From positions 263,257 through 327,256 of the IMG/VR virus record IMGVR_UViG_3300044644_001125: DNA of 64,000 nt. One strand, 5' to 3'. Below the pieces are notes generated by a model. That model was not told the origin of the DNA and made no database searches. It saw only the letters and a list, made by a program, of their open reading frames with translations. The translations under genes and the position numbers were made by a program. Below are positions 16,962 through 64,000 of the stretch, one piece after another (within the stretch, counting starts at the first letter, position 1; the number at the start of each line of letters is the position of its first letter).

Positions 16962-19900
16962 TTAGCCTATCATCGCGGTGGTTTTTTGCGATATAAACTT
17001 AGCCATTGGTGTATTATTTTCCAATAACGTAATACCAGCACTTGCCGCCGTTGCAGTTTGTTCATACCAAACTTTACCAACCTTTCTATAAACAACGACG
17101 TTAACACTTGCATTAACCGGTATACTATCAAGTACCGAATCAGTCAGCCTGATGTAGTTGGAAGTACCATCGACCGAGAATTCAGCATCTAACAATTCAT
17201 CAGCACGTGGGCTAGTAGAACCTAATGATTCATTGAATACATGCATTGGATTTTTACGCAATCTTCTTCCGCCCACAAATACTTCAACCTGATCGCATGG
17301 ACCATATCCAGTAGGTATATTACCAGCAGCCCAATTAGTTCTAACAGATTTAACTGGAATATAACTCAATGGTCCAACCGATCTAGTAGAACCATCAATC
17401 ATGAATGATTCTTTCATCTCAGTTTCGTTGTATGGGATTCGTTCTTGTATACTTACATCAGCAACATCAGTTCCTGCAGTATATAACTCTGCAATTGCAG
17501 TTCCCATACTACCACGTCTTAACTGTGATAATGTATTGTCAGTAAGCATCAAATACTCGATACGTTCGCCGTTAATCAATACAGTACCAGGTTGATTTCT
17601 TGCAGCAACAGGAATAGATAGCAGTGAGGCGTCAGTTACTAAAATCTCAGTATCATAGTAGTTCAAATCTTTAGCCAATTGGATAGTTCCAATTGAATAT
17701 CTGTTATATCTAAAGACATTTAGCATATCTTTTGATATTTCATATGATTTGGTACTGCACAATTTCGATCCAAATAATACAACTTTAACCATATCAGATT
17801 CACTAGTGGTGTCTAGTAGATATACTTTTGTTTTATCATCGGATAGATAATAATCACGGATTGGTGTTAATTTAACGCCGTTCACATAAACCCAAACATA
17901 ACTTGAATCAATTGGCTTCATTGCTAATGCGTAACTAGCTTTTCCACCAACATGCTCATCTGTCAATAATTGCATAGTTTGGTATTGTGTAAACCAGACA
18001 ACATTAACCACATCGTTCGTAGTCAGTTCACTACTGATAATCAACGTATTTCCGTTAATGCTATACTCGGCATTTGAATTGTTTTCTATTAATACCACGT
18101 CATTAATAACCAATGAGTCAATAGTAACCAGTGTCATTTCTTCATTGAAAACGTAATCGACCAAGAATGATTTTAAAACACCATTGACATATACTTTAAT
18201 ATTACTAGGTGTTGCATAACCACTTCCTAGTTCAATTTTGAATTGTGCAGTTGAGCCAGTATAAACACCGTAGGTTGTATCAACACCAGTCAACGCGCTA
18301 CCATTAACATTCACAATCATTGGCGTATATTGATGGTTGGTTGGTTCTACTGCAAACATTGACAAGGTGAATTCTGGGTTATCGGTATAAATGAAGGTTT
18401 GTTCATTAATTCTTGCGATTGACGTATCAAAATCAACATTTGCATTTGCACCAAAGCACACAACCTTAACATCGTCAGACACGGTAGGCATTGGGTTTAC
18501 TGTAACTTCCGTTTTACCAGTTATTTTCTTGCCTGTTGTACTACCAAAACTTGCGTCAGTGCTAATACCATTAACAGTTACATAAACTGATGTGGTATCT
18601 TTAAACTTAGCATTTGTTGCAAATTTGGCTGATTTACCATCAGCAACGAACGATTTTGAATCGAGAATTGCAACACCACCAACCCCAATCGCCGTGATTT
18701 CAATGATAGCACCAGCCGTAACCGGTAATACAAACTTAACTGTATTGTTAGTTAGATTAATGGTATAGTGCGTGTCAATTGACTTCTTAACCTTATTCAC
18801 CGTCACAATAACCGATGAGAATTCGATGATAGGTAAACCAATACTATAGGTTGTTGTAATACCATCACTGATAAACACTGTTGAATGCAGTGGGGTTGAA
18901 CCAGTTGATTTAGTATCAAATACTTTAATACTTAAACTATCAAGTACTTGACCTGGTACGTTTTCTTCAGTTGCTGATACATTCTCTGGACTTATAAATT
19001 TACCACCTTCAATTATAATTTCCTCAGCCTTCAAACCAGTTGCAGTTGTATACGCGTTGTTCAATCTCTCCAACGAACCACCACTCATATTGGTATCCAC
19101 GATATTTGGGTCATTAATAACCAATGAACCATCGCTTTCTTCAGGTCTAAAGATTAACGTATCGCCTTGTATCGTGTCAAAATATGAACCAATATCAATA
19201 GTTGCCGACACGCCATCACCGATAAATGTTGGCATTTGTGCATATGGATTGATTGTACTAGTTGAATCCCATTGCGATGTATATGCAATATCATCCAATC
19301 TAATAACTGATGGCATTGACCCATCATACAAGGTGTATGCCGTTGATTTCAATCCATACTGTTTAACAGATTTCCATGATTCACGTTTAACATAGATATT
19401 AATGTGTTGACCAGCTACTGGAACAAATGGCAAAGTGACGGTTGTTGCTATTACTGGATTCGCAATACCATCACAAACATAATAGTAATCACTACTTTGT
19501 TCAACACTATCCCAATTATCAGTGAACCAAGGTTGTGAATCCCAACCACCAGTCACATCAAATGTAGTTCCTTGAACTTGAACTCCACCAAAATCCACAC
19601 CTGTTATTAACTGAGATAATTGATTACCTTTCATACCTGACATTGGTTGGTAGTATTTCGATATACGGTTAACACTATCAAGTAAACTATCGTGTTTTTC
19701 GTAATTTACAACAATAACATCACCAACTATTGGATTGTTATTGAATATAATCATACCAGAAGTAGCTATATTAGCATTACCAGCCGGTATTACCAATTCA
19801 ACCGTATATTCGCTACTAAGAATCAATTTATCATTGATATAAACAGTGATTCTATTTTTTTCATTTAGTGGAGCATACATCAAATTGAAAACTGATGTAT

Positions 19901-45331: not shown

Positions 45332-45628
45332 ATGAAATTCGAAATAGCACCTAAATCAACTGAGATAGAATCCAACTGGTTTGATGCAAAACTCTATTGC
45401 TTCTCCCTTAACATAGATGGTAAGACTGGTTGGAGATTACCAACAAGGGCAGAACTAAATGAAATTTATGAATCTGATAATGATTTCGTTATTTGCACCT
45501 ACTACTGGACATCTGCTGAATTTAGCGGCACCGGTGCTTGGACTCAACTATTCATTAATGGGATCCAGAACTTCCGCACGAAGGATTACGACAAAAATCA
45601 GGTTAGAGCAGTAAGGGACTTAGCATGA
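45332..45628 (+). CDS. DUF1566/Lcl-C (C-type lectin fold) protein
   Basis: W.DAK.YC..L..DG..GWRLPT..EL, YWTS, VRAVRD motifs. Confidence 0.8.
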   Translation: MKFEIAPKSTEIESNWFDAKLYCFSLNIDGKTGWRLPTRAELNEIYESDNDFVICTYYWTSAEFSGTGAWTQLFINGIQNFRTKDYDKNQVRAVRDLA

Positions 45629-45921
45629 AATTTGAAATAGCACCGAAAGAAACAGAGACCCAAGCCAATTGGGATGATGCCCGTTTGTATTGCTTTGCTC
45701 TTAATATAGATGAGAAAGTTGGCTGGAGATTACCTACTATTAAAGAGTTAAACTATATAAATCGTGTGATTAATGATCTTTCAACCGAAGATTACTGGTC
45801 ATCAATAGAACGACCAGACAAAAGATACGCAGAATGCTATACCACAATCGATGGTGGTTATACGGTCAATACATTAAAACACGATTTAGGCTATGTTAGC
45901 GCAGTAAGGGACTTAGTATGA
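45625..45921 (+). CDS. DUF1566/Lcl-C protein
   Basis: WDDARLYC, GWRLPTIKEL, YWSS, VSAVRD. Confidence 0.8.
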   Translation: MKFEIAPKETETQANWDDARLYCFALNIDEKVGWRLPTIKELNYINRVINDLSTEDYWSSIERPDKRYAECYTTIDGGYTVNTLKHDLGYVSAVRDLV

Positions 45922-47589: not shown

Positions 47590-48090
47590 AACTTGCTCAC
47601 CGAATTACTAGATAGAACATAGAAAGGTGAGAGAATTGCTAAGAAAGCCGCGCACAGGCGACCATTACGTGCCCTTAAACCCTGGTCTACTTGAATCACA
47701 GGGGATGGAAGTTCCGACATTAGCAACGGAGATATAGTTCACTACCCCACCAGATGAGTTATGGGATATGCCTTCATACAACCCATTTGAACTATAGCAA
47801 AAACGAATAACCAAGGCTAAAGATGGGTTGAGAAAACCCACGTTTACTAGATAAGGTAGCTGTTGTCTAGTAAGCCACCGTCAGATTAATAAGACTGAGC
47901 TCGAGGTACCGGCTGACCGCCTCTGTAATGCTCTACATGCTACTGTGATGCGATGCTTGTACGCAGAACCCTTGGACGTTTCAGTTCCACAATTAGAAAT
48001 GTCCATTGTCCTTTGAATTAACCCGAGTTTTTCGGGTTAAGATGTTCAGCTCCACAACCCGCAGTGAGGGCTCCGCTGGCGCGTCGCTTT
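47590..48090 (+). ncRNA. Putative large structured non-coding RNA (family not recognised)
   Basis: At least nine hand-identified helices (e.g. 47733-41/47788-96, 47844-53/47864-73, 47974-82/47996-48004, 48018-26/48032-40); more GC-rich than flanks; ORF-free; upstream promoter. Strand inferred from the promoter. Confidence 0.6.
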
Positions 48091-55799: not shown

Positions 55800-55869
55800 G
55801 CGAGCACCGCTAGGTGCGAGCCATAGAAAAACCTAATATAGTATAGCGAGCCGCTATCGCGGCGAGCCA
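55800..55869 (+). repeat. Two copies of the GCGA-stem-loop-GAGCCA element
   Basis: gcga-gcacc-gcta-ggtgc-gagcca (55800) and gcga-gccgc-tatc-gcggc-gagcca (55846). Confidence 0.85.
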
Positions 55870-55929: not shown

Positions 55930-58900
55930 ATGTCTTGGAAAAAACACTTCAAACCAGTTACTATCGACGGTCACGGTTCTCATAGCCCAATCAGCGGCGG
56001 TGGAAGACCAGGCCCTGCTAAAACTAACTACTCTAGCTTCCTACCAGATGTCTACGCTGGTACACCAAACCGCATCGATAGATACATGCAATATGATACC
56101 ATGGACATGGACTCTGAAGTCAATGCCGCTCTCGATATCATCGCAGAATTCTGTACGCAAAAAGATAAAGAAAATGAAACACCTTTTCATACCTCCTTCC
56201 GTGGACAACCTACCTCCACCGAAGTTAAACTCATTAAAGACTGCTTGCAGAAATGGTGCAAACAACAACAATTCGAAACTCGTATCTTTAGAATCGTCAG
56301 AAATACCTTCAAGTACGGTGACTGCTTCTTCCTAAGAGACCCCGAAACTAAGAAATGGTTGTACGTTGACCCAGTCAAAGTTAGTAAAATTATCGCAAAC
56401 GAATCAGAGGGCAAAATCCCTGAACAATACGTTATCAAAGATATTAACTTTAACTTTAAAAACTTAATCGCCGTAACTCCTCATGGTATCACCAATACCT
56501 CACCCAGCGGTACTGCCAGTTATACTTCAGGTGGCAGCCTAGCTAGAGGTATGGTAGGCGATACAGCTAGAGCTACCGGTACCAGATTCCAAAATGCAAT
56601 CAATGAAATCGCAGTCGATGCCAAAGACGTTGTTCATATCAGCCTCAGTGAAGGTCTTGATAATAACTTCCCATTTGGTAATAGCTTACTCGAATCTGTT
56701 TTCAAAGTCTATAAACAAAAAGAATTGCTCGAAGATGCGGTTATTATCTACAGAATTCAGAGAGCACCAGAGCGTTTGGTGTTTTATGTTGACGTAGGTA
56801 ACATGCCAGCACATTTGGCAATGGGCTTTGTTGAAAGAGTTAAGAATGAGATTCAACAAAGACGTATACCAAGCTCAACAGGCGGTGCATCTGGTAGTAC
56901 AGTCGATTCAAGTTACAATCCACTTTCAGTAGGTGAAAACTTTTATTTGCCTTCCACAAGTGAGGGACGTGGCTCTAGGGTTGAAACATTGCCAGGTGGC
57001 TGTTTCGCAATGGATACTAAAGTATCGTTATTAGATGGTCGTGAACTATCTATCCGTGATATCGAAACTGAACTAAAAGATGGTAAAACCTTATGGACTT
57101 ACTCATGTGAACCAATAACAGGTAAAGTCTTACCCGGATTAATCACATGGGCTGGTGTTACACATAAGTCTGCTAAAGTTATGAAAATAACTTTAGATAA
57201 CGGTGAAACTATTACATGTACACCTGATCACAAGTTCCCAGTATACGAACAAGAGTTTAAACGTGCTGACGAGTTTAAAGTTGGTGATAGTCTGATTCCT
57301 CTTTATAGAAAAACTGAGAAAGTATCAGCAAAAGCCAACGATTACGAACAGTATTTTGATAATGCCGATAAAACTTGGAAATTCACACACAGAACTGTTG
57401 CTGATTATCTAAAAGATGATGTAGTAAAATTCGAAGTATACAAAGAAGAGTACACAAGCGGATTGTATGAAGTTCGTCATCACAAAAACTTCAATCGGTT
57501 CGATAATTCACCAGAAAACCTGTGCTTTATGGGTTGGAGAGACCATATTAGGTTTCATGGCGAAAATTTTGCAAGTACCTTGGAATATCTAAAAGAAAAT
57601 GAACCTGAGTTATACCAAGCACGCTGTGATGCGATAAGCCTCGGTCATACTAAACGATGGGAAGGGCTAGCAGATGAAGATAGAGCCGCTGTTGGTATTA
57701 AATCAGCAGAAGCATGGGCTAGATGTACACCGGAAGAATATGACAGCTGGTGTGAAAGTATTAGTGAGGGGTTGCTAGAGTATTGTGCAAACTTAACACC
57801 TGAAGAAAAAGAAATTCGCGATGCCAATTCGCGTGCTGCTTTTATCATCGGAAACCAGAAGTTCAATGAAAAGATGCAGAATGATCCAGTATTTTATGCG
57901 ATGGTTGTTGGTAAACGAATGACATATTGGACACCAGAGAAGCGTGAATGGCGTGCAGAACAAACACGTGCGAATGGCTTAGTTTTCCGTGAAACTGAAT
58001 CATACAAAGAAAATACCAAAAAATCGGCAGATTCTCAACGTATGAAATATTCACACAAAATGCTGAAATATGTTATAAACTTGGTTAAAGGTAAAACCAC
58101 ATATCAAGTTGGATTAACCGATGTTGTAAACGCATTGAACAATGATCAAGAAATGCTTGATGAATTGTACGAGCTGAATAAAGAAAACACCACGCCAAAT
58201 TGGAAAGTCTCCGACGGCTACACTGAATCGAATGTTAAAACCATGGTTAAACATTTTGGATATGAAAAATGGTCTGATTTCCGTAGAAAAGAAAGCATAC
58301 ACAATCATACAATCACAGCCATTGAATACTTGGATGATGAGATTGAGGTTGGTACGTTGACCATTGATAATGACGAAAAATACCATAATTATCATACATT
58401 TGCGTTGAGTTGTGGGGTATTTGTGTTCAATAGTCAGACAGGTGAAATAACGGATTTGCGCTACTTCACCAATAAGTTGTTTAGAGCTCTCCGTATACCA
58501 GCAAGTTACTTACCAACTGGTATTGAAGAAGCCTCGAATACCGTAGCGGATGGAAAAGTGGGAACTGCGTATATCCAAGAGTTTAGATTTAATGAGTATT
58601 GTAAACGACTACAGAACTTATTGGTACAGACGTTTGATTTGGAGTTTAAACTTTGGTTATATTCGCAAGGTATCAACATTGATAGTAGTTTATTTGAACT
58701 GAAGTTTAATGAGCCGCAGAACTTTGCAGCGTATAGACAAAGTGAGTTAGATACGACTCGAGTGAATATCTTTGCGCAGTTGCAAGAGATACCATATTTG
58801 AGTAAACGCTTTGCAATGAAGCGATTCTTGGGTATGACACAAGAGGAGATCACAGAGAATGAAGCCATGTGGCGTGAAGAGAACGGCCATAAGTTAGAAT

Positions 58901-59100
58901 CATTGGTAGATGGTGCTGGAGAGTTACGTTCTGCTGGGATTTCGCCAAGTGGAATTGCATCTGATATGAGTTCACAAGACGAGCAGGCACCTGAAGGCGT
59001 AGGTCAAGGACCAGACGGTGAGGCTGGTGGTATTGGTTCTGCTCCAGGTCCAATGGGTAATGCGGCACCTGGACCGACTGGTGGCCCAATGGGTATGTAA
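55930..59100 (+). CDS. Portal vertex protein (T4 gp20-like) containing an intein
   Basis: MDMDSEVNAALDIIAE, LLEDAVIIYRIQRAPERLVFYVDVGNMP, DLRYFTNKLFRALRIPASYL. Confidence 0.92.
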   Translation: MSWKKHFKPVTIDGHGSHSPISGGGRPGPAKTNYSSFLPDVYAGTPNRIDRYMQYDTMDMDSEVNAALDIIAEFCTQKDKENETPFHTSFRGQPTSTEVKLIKDCLQKWCKQQQFETRIFRIVRNTFKYGDCFFLRDPETKKWLYVDPVKVSKIIANESEGKIPEQYVIKDINFNFKNLIAVTPHGITNTSPSGTASYTSGGSLARGMVGDTARATGTRFQNAINEIAVDAKDVVHISLSEGLDNNFPFGNSLLESVFKVYKQKELLEDAVIIYRIQRAPERLVFYVDVGNMPAHLAMGFVERVKNEIQQRRIPSSTGGASGSTVDSSYNPLSVGENFYLPSTSEGRGSRVETLPGGCFAMDTKVSLLDGRELSIRDIETELKDGKTLWTYSCEPITGKVLPGLITWAGVTHKSAKVMKITLDNGETITCTPDHKFPVYEQEFKRADEFKVGDSLIPLYRKTEKVSAKANDYEQYFDNADKTWKFTHRTVADYLKDDVVKFEVYKEEYTSGLYEVRHHKNFNRFDNSPENLCFMGWRDHIRFHGENFASTLEYLKENEPELYQARCDAISLGHTKRWEGLADEDRAAVGIKSAEAWARCTPEEYDSWCESISEGLLEYCANLTPEEKEIRDANSRAAFIIGNQKFNEKMQNDPVFYAMVVGKRMTYWTPEKREWRAEQTRANGLVFRETESYKENTKKSADSQRMKYSHKMLKYVINLVKGKTTYQVGLTDVVNALNNDQEMLDELYELNKENTTPNWKVSDGYTESNVKTMVKHFGYEKWSDFRRKESIHNHTITAIEYLDDEIEVGTLTIDNDEKYHNYHTFALSCGVFVFNSQTGEITDLRYFTNKLFRALRIPASYLPTGIEEASNTVADGKVGTAYIQEFRFNEYCKRLQNLLVQTFDLEFKLWLYSQGINIDSSLFELKFNEPQNFAAYRQSELDTTRVNIFAQLQEIPYLSKRFAMKRFLGMTQEEITENEAMWREENGHKLESLVDGAGELRSAGISPSGIASDMSSQDEQAPEGVGQGPDGEAGGIGSAPGPMGNAAPGPTGGPMGM
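57001..58431 (+). mobile_element. 477-aa intein with an HNH-type endonuclease insert
   Basis: Starts GG|CFAMDTKV, has block B TCTPDHKF, ends FALSCGVFVFN|S; internal RHHKNFNRFDNSPENL...H...H. Confidence 0.88.
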
Positions 59101-60941: not shown

Positions 60942-60965
60942 GCGAGCACCGCTAGGTGCGAGCCA
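60942..60965 (+). repeat. GCGA-stem-loop-GAGCCA element
   Basis: gcgagcaccgctaggtgcgagcca followed by ATAGGAAACCAA and ATG. Confidence 0.85.
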
Positions 60966-60977
60966 ATAGGAAACCAA

Positions 60978-61286
60978 ATGAAATTCGAAATAGCACCTAA
61001 ATCGACAGAGATCCAAACCAACTGGGAAGATGCCAGACTCTACTGCTTCTCTCTTAATATAGACGGTAAAACCGGATGGCGATTACCAAGTGTTTATGAA
61101 TTAGAATCGTTTACCAGATCAACCAATATGGAAAATGCTCTGTATTGGACTGGTACATCATACAAGAGTTACCCAAATGGCGCTACTTCGATTCATTTTG
61201 GTAAAAACAGTTGCTCCGTCCATTTCTTTACCAAAGAATCTTCGTTGTGGGTTAGAGCAGTGAGAGATCTAAAAGATGATCTTTGA
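60978..61286 (+). CDS. DUF1566/Lcl-C protein
   Basis: WEDARLYC, GWRLPS..EL, YWTG, VRAVRDLKDD. Confidence 0.8.
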   Translation: MKFEIAPKSTEIQTNWEDARLYCFSLNIDGKTGWRLPSVYELESFTRSTNMENALYWTGTSYKSYPNGATSIHFGKNSCSVHFFTKESSLWVRAVRDLKDDL

Positions 61287-61566
61287 AATAGCACCCAAAT
61301 CAACAGAGATCCAAGCCAGCTGGTATGAAGCTAGAATGTATTGCTTCTCCCTTAATATCGATGGTAAGATCGGATGGAGATTACCAACTAAAGAAGAATT
61401 GAATGAGATATACCTTTCAGAAAATGATTTTGAAAAACGTTGGTATTGGTCCTCTACTGAGTACCTTGGCAACGGCGCCTGGGTTCAGTATTTCGGCGAT
61501 GGCGACCAGGGCAACTTCGGTAAGAGCAGCGGCGGCTTCTACGTTAGAGCCATTAGATCAATATAA
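61276..61566 (+). CDS. DUF1566/Lcl-C protein with a DGR-like variable region
   Basis: GWRLPTKEEL, WYWSSTE; 61465-61539 is 47/75 GC with 16 of 25 codons ending in C. Confidence 0.82.
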   Translation: MIFEIAPKSTEIQASWYEARMYCFSLNIDGKIGWRLPTKEELNEIYLSENDFEKRWYWSSTEYLGNGAWVQYFGDGDQGNFGKSSGGFYVRAIRSI

Positions 61567-61571
61567 TAGAA

Positions 61572-61595
61572 GCGAGCACCGCTAGGTGCGAGCCA
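61572..61595 (+). repeat. GCGA-stem-loop-GAGCCA element
   Basis: Exact copy 5 nt after the stop of 61276..61566. Confidence 0.85.
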
Positions 61596-61609
61596 ATAGG
61601 AAAACAACA

Positions 61610-61933
61610 ATGATTGAAATAGCACCCAAAGAATACGAAATTAGTATAGGTTACCAAGAAGCAAGGATGTATTGCTTTTCACTTAACATTGATGGTAAAA
61701 TAGGTTGGAGATTACCTACAATTGAAGAGTTGGAAAACATCTATACCTGTGTGAATGATTTTATGAAAAACGGGTGGTATTGGTCATCGACTGAAGTTGA
61801 AAACGGAGTTTGGTTTAAATCATTTAGTCGATACCCGAAACACGGACCAACTGGATGGAAAGATATCATCTATTTTGACGAATTTCATACAAATGTAAAC
61901 TCCTGTTTAGTCAGACCAGTGAGAGACCTATGA
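61610..61933 (+). CDS. DUF1566/Lcl-C protein
   Basis: MIEIAPKE start after AGGA; GWRLPTIEEL, YWSSTE, VRPVRD. Confidence 0.8.
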   Translation: MIEIAPKEYEISIGYQEARMYCFSLNIDGKIGWRLPTIEELENIYTCVNDFMKNGWYWSSTEVENGVWFKSFSRYPKHGPTGWKDIIYFDEFHTNVNSCLVRPVRDL

Positions 61934-62271
61934 CTTATTTTTCAACAAAACTTTACCCGCCAACTCCACGATTACCATGTCAACTGTCGGATTCTATGTA
62001 TTGGAAGAAAATGTCTTGGGAAGAAGCCAAGATGTATTGCTTTTCTCTTAATGACAGGGGTATAATTGGATGGAGATTACCTACGTTATTTGAGTTGAAC
62101 AGTATTATATTACGAGTATCCTCACCACTAGACCATGAATTTGAGATTTGGTCAGAAGAAAATGGACAGGACATTGCTTGGTTTATGTCTAGTCGGAATA
62201 GTCAGAGATTGGCAAGCAAGTATATGGATGATATTTACTGTATCCCAGTTCGAGATCTAAAAGACGATTAA
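61930..62271 (+). CDS. DUF1566/Lcl-C protein (divergent)
   Basis: SWEEAKMYC, GWRLPTLFEL, CIPVRDLKDD. Confidence 0.75.
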   Translation: MTYFSTKLYPPTPRLPCQLSDSMYWKKMSWEEAKMYCFSLNDRGIIGWRLPTLFELNSIILRVSSPLDHEFEIWSEENGQDIAWFMSSRNSQRLASKYMDDIYCIPVRDLKDD

Positions 62272-62291
62272 TACCACTGAGAAAAACCAAA

Positions 62292-62588
62292 ATGAACTTT
62301 GAAATAGCACCAAAATCAACCGAAATACTATCCACATGGAATGATGCCCGTTTGTATTGTTTCTCTCTTATTATTGATGATAAAACTGGATGGAGATTAC
62401 CCACTAAAGATGAATTAAACGAAATATACGAATCAGAAAATGATTTTGAAAAACGTTGGTATTGGTCTTCTACTGAGTATAATGGCAACAGCGGCATCTT
62501 GGGTCAGAATATGAATGGTGGCATCCAGGGCTACGGTGGCGGTAAGAACTACGCCGTCGCCTACGTTAGAGCCATCAGATCAATATAA
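62292..62588 (+). CDS. DUF1566/Lcl-C protein with a DGR-like variable region
   Basis: Constant flanks nearly identical to 61276..61566; 62481-62561 is rich in NNC/NNT codons. Confidence 0.82.
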   Translation: MNFEIAPKSTEILSTWNDARLYCFSLIIDDKTGWRLPTKDELNEIYESENDFEKRWYWSSTEYNGNSGILGQNMNGGIQGYGGGKNYAVAYVRAIRSI

Positions 62589-62592
62589 TATC

Positions 62593-62616
62593 GCGAGCAC
62601 CGCTAGGTGCGAGCCA
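62593..62616 (+). repeat. GCGA-stem-loop-GAGCCA element
   Basis: Exact copy 4 nt after the stop of 62292..62588. Confidence 0.85.
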
Positions 62617-62630
62617 ATAAGGAAAACCAA

Positions 62631-63026
62631 ATGACAGAAGACCAATTCCTGCAATCCCTAAAACTAAAGCCTAAGCCAATTGAACCAATCGAGGTTTACG
62701 AGTCTTTGAATATAGAAATTGCACCCAGTCATTACTGTAGGCAACTGACTTGGGCGGATGCAAAACTTTACGCGTTTGCTTTAAACATAGAAGGTAAGAT
62801 CGGATGGAGATTACCGTGTGACGAAGAAATGGGTTGCTTACTTGAAAATCATCCAAGATTTAACGGTTTCTGGTATATGCAATACTGGTGTGATGTAATC
62901 AAATCCGGCCGTATAACATCTAAAGAGTATACTGCGTGGTTGGAACCCACTGGTCTACATTTCCAAACTCGTAATGGCGAATATGTACATAATACTGTCT
63001 TTGTCCGAGATCTAAAAGATGATTGA
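62631..63026 (+). CDS. DUF1566/Lcl-C protein (divergent)
   Basis: ATG after AAGGA; IEIAPS...TWADAKLY, GWRLP..EE, FVRDLKDD. Confidence 0.75.
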   Translation: MTEDQFLQSLKLKPKPIEPIEVYESLNIEIAPSHYCRQLTWADAKLYAFALNIEGKIGWRLPCDEEMGCLLENHPRFNGFWYMQYWCDVIKSGRITSKEYTAWLEPTGLHFQTRNGEYVHNTVFVRDLKDD

Positions 63027-63294
63027 GATATCACCTAAATCATTCGAAAAGCGTCTAACCCACGACGATGCTAAATTTTACGTATTCTCACTAGGTAATG
63101 GTTGGCGATTCCCAACAGTTGAGGAATTGCGAATGATACATGGTTCTGATAATGATTTGGAAAACGAGTTACATTTTACTAATTCCGATACGTTAGTTTC
63201 TTTTAGTTATCGGCGTTTCATCAAATGTTTCGAACGGAATGAATGCGAAGATGATTGTTTTATCAGACCAGTCAGAGATCTAAAAGATGATTAA
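63019..63294 (+). CDS. DUF1566/Lcl-C protein (divergent, short)
   Basis: MIEISPK, GWRFPTVEEL, IRPVRDLKDD. Confidence 0.7.
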   Translation: MIEISPKSFEKRLTHDDAKFYVFSLGNGWRFPTVEELRMIHGSDNDLENELHFTNSDTLVSFSYRRFIKCFERNECEDDCFIRPVRDLKDD

Positions 63295-63375: not shown

Positions 63376-63399
63376 GCGAGTGCCGCTAGGCACGAGCCA
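63376..63399 (+). repeat. GCGA-stem-loop-GAGCCA element (covariant stem)
   Basis: gcga-gtgcc-gcta-ggcac-gagcca. Confidence 0.85.
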
Positions 63400-63710: not shown

Positions 63711-64000
63711 TCCCGCTTTCGTCTTAGGGAATGGTCGTAGTCGCTTGGCTATTGATTGCTCTCAATTAACAACAAATGGAACTGTTTACGGATGTAATGC
63801 AGTTTATAGGGAATTTGACCCAGACTACTTGATTGCAGTCGATACCAAAATGGTCAATGAAATTGTCTCAACCGGATACCAAGAAACCCACCAAGTTTGG
63901 ACTAATCCCAATAGAGGGATTCATACTAAAAAGAATCTTAACTTCTTTAGTCCACACAAAGGATGGAGCTCAGGTCCAACTGCTCTTTGGTTTGCCGCGT
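63697..64000 (+). CDS. 3'-truncated protein with MptE/DUF115-like glycosyltransferase-related fold
   Basis: Hand translation MPNNSPAFVLGNGRSR...YGCNAVYREFDPDYLIAVD...; runs off the window. Confidence 0.6.
   Translation, partial: MPNNSPAFVLGNGRSRLAIDCSQLTTNGTVYGCNAVYREFDPDYLIAVDTKMVNEIVSTGYQETHQVWTNPNRGIHTKKNLNFFSPHKGWSSGPTALWFAA

What the first reader, a model, noticed from the sequence alone, without database searches (positions are those of the whole stretch)
61417..62616. DGR-type hypermutated variable regions in two DUF1566 genes, with no RT or template repeat in the window
Seen: 61276..61566 and 62292..62588 share a near-identical 5' flank (tcagaaaatgattttgaaaaacgttggtattggtcYtctactgagta) and 3' flank (tacgttagagccatYagatcaatataata) around a divergent core. 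In the first gene the core (61465-61539) is 63% GC in an AT-rich genome. Its variable codons are all NNC/NNT, and the constant residues (A-W-x-Q-x-F-x-x-G-x-Q...K...Y-V-R-A) are kept. The last five variable codons compare as agc/aac, agc/tac, ggc/gcc, ggc/gtc, ttc/gcc: positions 1-2 vary and C is fixed at position 3. Established: this is the footprint of adenine-specific mutagenesis of AAY codons by diversity-generating retroelements, and C-type lectin-fold/DUF1566 domains are common DGR targets. Each gene is followed within 4-5 nt by a GC hairpin, as in BPP-1-type target recognition. Inference: a multi-target DGR acts in trans from elsewhere in the genome or from the host. The predicted TR would read about TAC AAT AAC AAC AAC GCC TGG AAT CAG AAT TTC AAC AAT GGC AAC CAG AAC AAC AAC AAT AAG (AAC)5 TAC GTT AGA GCC.
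Basis: partly seen in the sequence, partly recalled or inferred. Interest (0 to 1): 0.8.

Follow-up and report, generated by a model that had tools for sequence, protein, structure and literature searches.

The report
DGR target genes without their retroelement
Two small lectin-fold genes of a 327-kb lake phage have tips written by a mutagenic reverse-transcriptase system (a DGR), but that system is found only in sister strains and not in this genome.

Summary
Genes 61276-61566 and 62292-62588 share near-identical flanks around GC-rich cores made of NNC/NNT codons. They belong to a family of about 62-68 DUF1566/Lcl_C paralogues of roughly 100 aa in a 327-kb jumbo phage.

The DGR reading of the cores is right. 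A metagenome contig (L103) carries a complete cassette: target, Avd, TR and RT. Against it, VR1 has 24 of 44 adenine sites changed and 1 of 64 other sites (p 5e-11). TR variants in related cassettes match the other VR subtypes in this genome.

The proposed location is wrong. The genome closes on itself and holds no RT and no TR. No species-representative bacterial genome holds the TR. The cassette sits in sister strains (about 93% identical flanks) beside the equivalent of genome position 19.6 kb, where this genome has nothing.

Three alleles of a paralogue outside the window, from other samples, differ at 0.5-2% before the VR and about 30% inside it, only at TR adenines. So diversification is live in the population. 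In this genome the regions are orphaned. VR2 and three other VRs are static between strains.

The hairpin is a 37-copy genome-wide repeat; its role is unresolved.

The parts
61276..61566 (+). VR1 gene: 96-aa stand-alone DUF1566/Lcl_C (C-type lectin fold) protein, a remote DGR target
   Evidence: ORF. Pfam Lcl_C E 1.7e-12. AF2 model pLDDT 96.5; best PDB match is the Legionella Lcl C-terminal domain 8q4e, TM 0.85.
61444..61551 (+). VR1: 108-nt stretch homologous to the type-A TR. The adenine-mutated codons lie in 61462-61539.
   Evidence: Against TR L103:834-941:-, 24 of 44 A sites and 1 of 64 non-A sites are changed, Fisher p 5e-11.
61572..61594 (+). GC hairpin repeat, 5 nt after the VR1 stop codon. 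Its link to the DGR is unresolved.
   Evidence: One of 37 genome copies with compensatory stem changes. Folds at -12.8 kcal/mol, z -3.4. Enriched behind VR-type genes.
62292..62588 (+). VR2 gene: 98-aa DUF1566/Lcl_C paralogue with an older, partly decayed VR
   Evidence: ORF. Pfam Lcl_C E 3.7e-9.
62460..62573 (+). VR2: TR-homologous stretch. Variable codons lie in 62478-62561. It is two codons longer than VR1 and of the 'atg aat' subtype.
   Evidence: Against the best TR variant, 21 of 46 A sites and 9 of 65 non-A sites are changed, with 3 gap columns, p 2e-4. Nearly the same core is present in L001 and L004.
62593..62615 (+). GC hairpin repeat, 4 nt after the VR2 stop codon
60978..61286 (+). 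Family member without a TR-like tail. Its end overlaps the VR1 gene start by 11 nt.
   Evidence: core GC 0.40, A present at third codon positions.
61610..61933 (+). Family member without a VR signature (ATG at 61610)
61930..62271 (+). Family member without a VR signature
62631..63026 (+). Family member without a VR signature (ATG at 62631)
63019..63294 (+). Short family member without a VR signature
45332..45628 (+). Older VR-type paralogue (genome 308588-308884); the TR relation is almost erased
   Evidence: 20 of 45 A sites against 18 of 63 non-A sites changed.
45625..45921 (+). Paralogue with no remaining TR signal (genome 308881-309177)
   Evidence: 21 of 44 A sites against 33 of 64 non-A sites changed.

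Best explanation
What it is: the two genes are remote targets of a diversity-generating retroelement (DGR) that belongs to this clade of freshwater T4-like jumbo phages.

How it works (established DGR mechanism; not assayed here): in DGR-carrying strains an Avd-RT complex copies the template repeat (TR) RNA, misreading adenines. The cDNA then replaces the last roughly 100 nt of a small C-type-lectin-fold gene. AAY codons in the TR become random NNY codons on the protein's binding face.

Shown here:
- The TR-VR relation holds.
- The cassette exists in sister strains.
- Several TR variants match the VR subtypes found in this genome.
- Alleles of one paralogue in nature differ only at TR adenines.
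- This genome has no RT, Avd or TR.

Inferred:
- The variable regions here were written either in a recent DGR-carrying ancestor or in a relative, then imported by recombination.
- VR1 is recent. It has no non-A change within the VR and a single one in the 5' flank codon.
- VR2 is older.
- In this genome the regions are now frozen unless a DGR is supplied from outside.
For: TR and cassette:
- Cassette L103 has an RT (RVT_1 E 2e-13, with IGNLSSQ and YVDD motifs), an Avd (bAvd E 2e-8), and a TR between them.
- VR1: 24 of 44 A sites against 1 of 64 non-A sites changed, p 5e-11. Eight to thirteen other paralogues show the same bias, with a gradient of 1 to 33 non-A changes.
- TR variants A, A+1 codon, B and B' occur in cassettes that encode the identical Avd. 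They reproduce the VR subtypes, including the length differences.

Location of the cassette:
- L165 carries the cassette beside 1,069 nt that are 93.5% identical to genome 19622-20690. This genome has two convergent gene ends at that point.
- A 271,688-bp scaffold has the cassette at 0.4-2.2 kb and ten Lcl_C genes at 109-117 kb.

Live diversification: alleles of the o240057 orthologue differ at 1-4 of 186 nt before the VR and at 23-25 of 78 nt inside it. They show 0-1 of 64 non-A changes against the TR.

Absence here:
- PF00078 gives no hit at E<=10.
- An HMM built from 80 DGR RTs finds nothing in the six-frame translation.
- TR scans find nothing.
- The genome closes on itself.
- Relatives of 306 kb and 372 kb (the latter 100% complete) also lack an RT.
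Against: - The genome is a metagenome assembly, so a strain-variable island could have been left out or collapsed.
- The matching TRs come from other samples.
- No raw-read evidence was obtained for this population. Only fragmented Logan contigs could be laid.
- VR2 has an indel and 9 non-A changes.
- Four VRs are unchanged between strains that are 6-11% apart, so homing into these remote targets is rare or episodic.
- The 3' homing signal is not defined.
Confidence: 0.8

Rival explanations
1. A DGR encoded in this same genome diversifies the regions. The RT and TR were missed because they are divergent or lie in an unassembled part.
For: CheckV rates the record only 92% complete and 'linear'. 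The array lies at the contig end.
Against: - The contig ends overlap by 176 nt, 174 identical, and three relatives run from the end into the start.
- Three independent RT searches and two TR scans are empty.
- At both loci where sister strains carry a DGR, this genome has other sequence.
Confidence: 0.07
2. A DGR of the bacterial host rewrites the phage genes during infection.
For: DGR parts can act in trans (Wu et al. 2018, PMC5758913, citing plasmid experiments).
Against: - The TR is absent from 185,579 species-representative genomes.
- All cassettes found are AT-rich like the phage (37-39% GC).
- Two cassettes are flanked by phage sequence 92-93% identical to this genome.
Confidence: 0.03
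3. Ordinary paralogue divergence, with diversifying selection and gene conversion and no retroelement, produced the cores.
For: - The family has more than 60 copies.
- Copy number differs between strains.
- Flanks are mosaic between paralogues.
Against: - It cannot explain changes confined to TR adenines (24/44 against 1/64).
- It cannot explain conserved third positions beside random first and second positions.
- It cannot explain GGC at 77% in a genome that uses 11%.
Confidence: 0.02
4. The regions are rewritten in this DGR-less genome by the cassette of a co-infecting sister phage. Retrohoming would then act between genomes, so the regions are not truly frozen.
For: - VR1 has no non-A change within the VR, although strain backbones differ by about 6%.
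- Its counterpart in L001 was written from a different TR subtype.
- Runs X5, X6, X7, X15, X20, X21 and X22 hold parts of both the window and the cassette.
Against: - Recent island loss, or import of alleles by homologous recombination, explains the same facts.
- The four best holders of the window are not among the 24 listed holders of the cassette.
- Four VRs are static between strains.
Confidence: 0.15

Closest known systems
Legionella pneumophila DGR and its target LdtA (the 'CLec2' VR class; category 'd', DUF1566, of Wu et al. 2018, PMC5758913)
   Same: - The same VR scaffold at the C-terminus of a DUF1566/Lcl_C domain (YWSST ... AW.Q.F..G.Q....K.....VRA.R).
- About half of that category are short, domain-only proteins.
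- The best structural match is the Legionella Lcl C-terminal domain.
   Different: LdtA is a bacterial surface lipoprotein with its cassette in the same genome. Here the proteins are about 97 aa with no other recognisable domain, they are encoded by a jumbo phage, and this genome has no cassette.
Treponema denticola DGR (TvpA plus seven non-adjacent targets)
   Same: One TR serves many dispersed targets, some more than 100 kb away.
   Different: - That system sits on a bacterial chromosome, uses an FGE-type lectin fold, and has its RT present.
- Here 8-13 or more targets lie in tandem arrays of a phage.
- Wu et al. expected no targets beyond 100 kb for phage DGRs. The 271-kb scaffold has them at about 109-117 kb.
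Bordetella phage BPP-1 DGR (Mtd, Avd, TR, Brt)
   Same: It is a phage-borne cassette with the order target-Avd-TR-RT and adenine-specific mutagenesis. A GC hairpin lies just downstream of the VR (the BPP-1 hairpin is recalled from memory).
   Different: - BPP-1 has one adjacent tail-fibre target, with an IMH made of a GC-rich block.
- Here the 3' homology to the TR ends after TACGTTAGAGCCA, and the flank is AT-rich.
- The hairpin here is a 37-copy repeat, and the target next to the cassette does not carry it.
Cyanobacterial DGR target paralogues (Vallota-Eastman et al. 2020, PMC7517822)
   Same: CLec targets were duplicated within the genome, with graded TR/VR homology. Some copies consist of the CLec domain alone.
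   Different: Those are cellular genomes and the copies are often fused to kinases. Here there are more than 60 copies in one virus, and the retroelement is present or absent depending on the strain.

Membership tests
Diversity-generating retroelement (DGR) system | A DGR-clade reverse transcriptase encoded in the same genome | tested here: not met
   No RT in the closed 327-kb genome. An RT is present in sister-strain contigs L103, L162-L169, L104 and L105.
Diversity-generating retroelement (DGR) system | A TR/VR pair whose differences fall at TR adenines | tested here: met
   VR1 against L103:834-941:- has 24/44 A sites and 1/64 non-A sites changed. VR2 has 21/46 and 9/65. The TR comes from another contig, not from this genome.
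Diversity-generating retroelement (DGR) system | An accessory protein (Avd) and a TR next to the RT | tested here: not met
   Absent in this genome. In L103 the order is target-Avd-TR-RT, with bAvd E 2e-8.
Diversity-generating retroelement (DGR) system | The VR lies at the 3' end of a gene for a C-type lectin (or Ig) fold protein | tested here: met
   Pfam Lcl_C. AF2 model pLDDT 96.5; matches are 8q4e and C-type lectins. The VR ends 15 nt before the stop codon.
Diversity-generating retroelement (DGR) system | Hypervariation between individuals that is confined to the VR | tested here: inconclusive
   - Met for the o240057 orthologue, outside the window: 0.5-2% difference before the VR against about 30% inside it.
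- VR1 has two alleles, written from TR subtypes A and B.
- VR2 and three other VRs are static.
- No raw reads were available.
Diversity-generating retroelement (DGR) system | A 3' homing signal (IMH), with or without a downstream hairpin | tested here: inconclusive
   - The motif AGATCAA(T) is shared by fresh remote VRs and by the VR next to the cassette. Its presence tracks freshness (p 0.003).
- A hairpin lies within 80 nt behind 10 of 20 VR-type genes against 1 of 48 other family members (p 6e-6).
- However, 27 of the 37 hairpins lie elsewhere.
Lcl_C / DUF1566 (PF07603) | A match above Pfam's gathering score | tested here: met
   48.1 and 37.3 bits against a cut-off of 34.9. There are 62 matches in the genome.

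The most novel reading that the evidence does not exclude
The DGR works as a shared good between co-infecting phage genomes. Strains that lack the cassette keep large arrays of ready targets, and these are rewritten whenever a cassette-bearing relative infects the same cell. Carrying the writer and carrying the written library would then be uncoupled across a phage population.
Probability: 0.15. Interest if true: 0.8.

Novelty: new variant of a known kind. Interest (0 to 1): 0.62.

Why it matters
DGRs in phages are known as one cassette beside one tail-fibre gene. Here a jumbo-phage clade spends about 6% of a genome on more than 60 copies of a minimal lectin-fold protein. At least 8-13 of these copies bear the mark of one retroelement.

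In carrier strains the targets lie up to about 110 kb from the cassette. Wu et al. 2018 did not expect that distance for phages.

The writer is a strain-variable island, and this genome has the library without the writer. That makes three questions testable with lake metagenomes and simple plasmid assays:
- How long do VRs stay recognisable after the DGR is lost?
- Do alleles spread by recombination or by retrohoming in trans?
- What does a phage do with a repertoire of small, probably intracellular, variable binders?

It also shows that a VR-only signature can be traced back to its TR.

Tried and rejected
- Megablast of the locus against GenBank phages gave no match.
- A protein search there found only distant hits, 31-49% identity, in Pseudomonas and Burkholderia phages.
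- The generic TR core found 89 GC-rich phage DGRs, 80 with an RT beside it. None had this family's AT-rich flanks.
- All-AAY TR patterns with the family's flanks found nothing in the metagenome or viral collections. They fail because the real TR has GGC at two codons that were predicted as AAC.
- The pattern that worked left the first five codons open.
- The final TR pattern is absent from IMG/VR and from the species-representative genomes.
- Read laying returned only Logan contigs, which break at the repeats, so SNVs within a sample could not be tested. X2 holds VR1 unchanged, X4 holds the L001-type allele, and X1 has no contig over the VR1 core.
- The correlation between freshness and hairpin presence is not significant (p 0.10).
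- The second DGR lineage (L104/L105) was considered as the writer and rejected. Its TR reads 'gcg tgg', 'ggg' and 'tat gtt cgc gct', which does not fit these VRs.

Full report
**Setting.** The window is the last 64 kb of a 327,256-bp viral contig of 38% GC. Lake-water metagenomes hold it. The portal gene is T4-like. The first 176 nt of the contig repeat its last 176 nt, with 174 identical. Three related IMG/VR contigs run from the contig end straight into its start. The genome is therefore closed, although the record is labelled linear and 92% complete.

**Observation.** Both ORFs are as described. Their 5' flanks match at 46 of 47 nt and their 3' flanks at 27 of 28 nt. The VR1 core (61465-61539) is 62.7% GC against 36% for the rest of the gene.

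The two genes are not alone. Pfam Lcl_C (DUF1566) matches 62 places in the genome. A motif scan lists 68 ORFs of about 70-130 aa, mostly in tandem arrays. About 13-20 of them end in the same scaffold as VR1.

In a codon alignment of 13 such genes, the N-terminal two thirds behave normally, with variation mainly at third positions. The tail behaves in reverse: 1.3-1.9 bits of entropy at positions 1 and 2 of the variable codons and 0-0.8 bits at position 3. Which codons end in T and which in C is the same in all copies. GGC supplies 77% of Gly codons in these cores and 11% genome-wide. Point mutation and selection do not produce this pattern.

**Looking for the retroelement in the genome.** Every search was empty.
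- PF00078 gives no candidate even at E<=10, while the control genomes respond.
- A scan for YxDD with the DGR motif finds nothing convincing.
- An HMM built from 80 DGR RTs finds nothing in the six-frame translation at full sensitivity.
- A scaffold scan, an AAY-density scan and a mismatch-tolerant TR pattern find no TR.
- Two related jumbo genomes, 306 kb and 372 kb (the latter with terminal repeats and 100% complete), also have no RT. They carry only 10 and 12 Lcl_C matches at E<=0.001.

**Finding the template.** The generic core of the predicted TR occurs in 89 viral contigs, 80 of them with a DGR RT next to it. All are GC-rich phages with other flanks. This shows that the scaffold is a widespread TR type.

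A pattern that combined this family's own 5' flank with unmutated AAY codons then hit one metagenome contig, L103 (1,822 bp, 37% GC). It reads, in order:
- the 3' end of a DUF1566 target with a VR;
- a 116-aa Avd (bAvd, E 2e-8);
- the TR (L103:834-941:-);
- an RT (RVT_1, E 2e-13, with IGNLSSQ and YVDD motifs).

Its first codon is AAC, not TAC, and two predicted AAC codons are GGC. Those two GGC codons explain why they are nearly constant in the VRs.

**TR-VR test.** VR1 (61444-61551) differs from this TR at 24 of 44 adenines and at 1 of 64 other bases (Fisher p 5e-11). The single exception is a C-to-T change in the flank codon before the VR.

The same Avd protein is encoded on contigs in 31 blocks of the assembly collection, and ten places were shown. 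Their TRs come in four variants:
- type A;
- type A with one extra AAC codon;
- type B, with 'atg tca' in place of 'ttc aac';
- type B', with 'atg aat'.

Each VR subtype in this genome, including the 30-codon ones, matches one of these variants. Non-adenine changes per VR range from 1-2 (VR1, o236965, o240057) through 4-7 and 9-13 to 33. I read this as time since the last homing event (inference). VR2 is in the middle, with 9 of 65 non-A changes and a one-codon insertion.

**Where the cassette lives.**
- In L165 the cassette follows 1,069 nt that are 93.5% identical to genome 19622-20690 (95% at protein level).
- In this genome two convergent genes end at 19610 and 19613, with nothing between them.
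- A 271,688-bp scaffold has the cassette at 0.4-2.2 kb and a tandem array of ten Lcl_C genes at 109-117 kb. That array is syntenic with this genome's array at 239-244 kb, and its VRs show the same adenine bias.
- A second DGR lineage (RT 68-69% identical) sits in other sister strains, where flanks are 91-92.5% identical to genome 178.7-179.5 kb and 184.1-191.4 kb. Its target is an FN3 plus DUF1566 fibre-like protein, and its own TR-VR differences are all at adenines.
- At that second locus this genome has a protein with the same N-terminus but another C-terminus, followed by a 248-aa ORF and a TnpB-like gene.
- So both cassettes are strain-variable islands, and this genome has neither.
- The TR is absent from 185,579 species-representative bacterial and archaeal genomes.

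**Is diversification live?** A protein search found 221 clusters (at 90% identity) at E<=1e-20, mostly singletons. Six of them share 95-100% of the last 63 N-terminal residues yet differ at 11-16 of 26 VR residues.

For three of these the DNA was fetched. They differ at 1-4 of 186 nt before the VR, at 23-25 of 78 nt inside it, and at 0 of 30 nt after it. Each has 0-1 non-adenine changes against a TR variant. These are alleles of the orthologue of genome gene 240057-240350, which lies outside the window.

For the window genes themselves the evidence is thinner.
- VR1 has a type-A allele here and in run X2. Contigs L001 and L003 and run X4 have a type-B allele.
- VR2 is nearly the same in L001 and L004.
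- Three VRs outside the window are unchanged, or changed only by ordinary point substitutions, in L002 at 88-94% backbone identity.
- L101 carries the same VR as genome gene 230285-230578, and L097 and L102 share one VR with each other.
- Homing into these remote targets is therefore real but infrequent.

**Protein.** AlphaFold2, run with 24 paralogues as the alignment, gives pLDDT 96.5. The best PDB match is the Legionella Lcl C-terminal domain (8q4e, TM 0.85), followed by C-type lectins. The proteins consist of this one domain. Their function is unknown. I infer a repertoire of variable binders.

**Hairpin.** The element behind both genes occurs 37 times on the transcribed strand. Its stem shows compensatory variants: CACC/GGTG, TGCC/GGCA, CTCC/GGAG, CCAC/GTGG and CGCC/GGCG. 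It folds as 5 bp, a tandem G-A/A-G internal loop, then 2 bp.

A copy lies within 80 nt behind 10 of 20 VR-type genes but behind only 1 of 48 other family members (p 6e-6). However, 27 copies lie elsewhere, some beside promoter-like TTGACA boxes. The target next to the cassette in L103 has no copy of it. It may mark mobile gene cassettes, help homing, or do both. I cannot tell which.

A better candidate for part of the homing signal is AGATCAA(T), just after the VR. The fresh remote VRs and the VR next to the cassette share it, and its presence tracks freshness (p 0.003).

**Verdict.** The proposed location of the writer is wrong: it is in neither this genome nor the host, but in a strain-variable island of sister phages.

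This is a new variant of a known kind. It combines a large family of minimal lectin-fold targets in a jumbo phage, remote targets more than 100 km... more than 100 kb from the cassette in carrier strains (Wu et al. 2018, PMC5758913, did not expect this for phages), and a genome that keeps the written library without the writer.

Noticed in passing
window 55800-55822, 60942-60964, 61572-61594, 62593-62615, 63376-63398 (and 32 more copies in the genome): A 23-nt hairpin repeat, GCGAG-NNNN-GNTA-NNNN-CGAGCC. The 4-bp inner stem varies by compensatory changes, and the copies lie on the transcribed strand. Some sit beside TTGACA promoter-like boxes, including three tandem copies at genome 154486-154615. 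It has no Rfam match at gathering score.
   Followed up: partly
window 47647-47797 (+): A full-length match to the Rfam family Polynucleobacter-1 RNA (RF01718): 80 bits against a gathering score of 37. It may hint at a Polynucleobacter-like freshwater host, or at a phage origin for that motif.
   Followed up: no
window 55930-59100 (+): The T4-like portal protein (Gp20 family, E 2e-96) is interrupted by an intein (Intein_splicing, E 2e-14, residues about 366-822).
   Followed up: partly
window 63825-64000 and genome 1-176: The contig's last 176 nt repeat its first 176 nt with two mismatches. The record labelled 'linear, 92% complete' is therefore a closed genome assembled from a mixed population.
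   Followed up: yes
window 61276-61286 and 63019-63026; many other arrays in the genome: Family genes overlap head to tail. The C-terminal ...DLKDD-stop is read in another frame as ATGATTGA..., the start of the next gene. This suggests translational coupling along the arrays.
   Followed up: no
genome 179139-183791 (outside the window); loci L104, L105: A second DGR lineage in sister strains targets an FN3 plus DUF1566 fibre-like protein. At that locus this genome has another C-terminal domain, a 248-aa ORF, a 63-aa remnant of the neighbouring gene, and a TnpB/IS605-like ORF.
   Followed up: partly
window 61488-61571, run X1: In the run that holds 93% of the stretch, no Logan contig covers the VR1 core, although the flanks are covered and VR2 is covered without a difference. 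This could reflect several VR1 alleles in that sample or only an assembly break.
   Followed up: no
L103:1692-1796:- against L103:834-941:-: The VR next to the cassette in L103 is one codon shorter than the TR on the same contig. So even adjacent TR-VR pairs in this clade differ in length variant.
   Followed up: no
genome-wide; G004 and G007: Family size differs sharply between relatives. This genome has 62 Lcl_C matches at E<=10 (about 50 at E<=0.001). The 306-kb and 372-kb relatives have 10 and 12 at E<=0.001. Whole genes are present or absent between strains inside the 236-240 kb array.
   Followed up: partly
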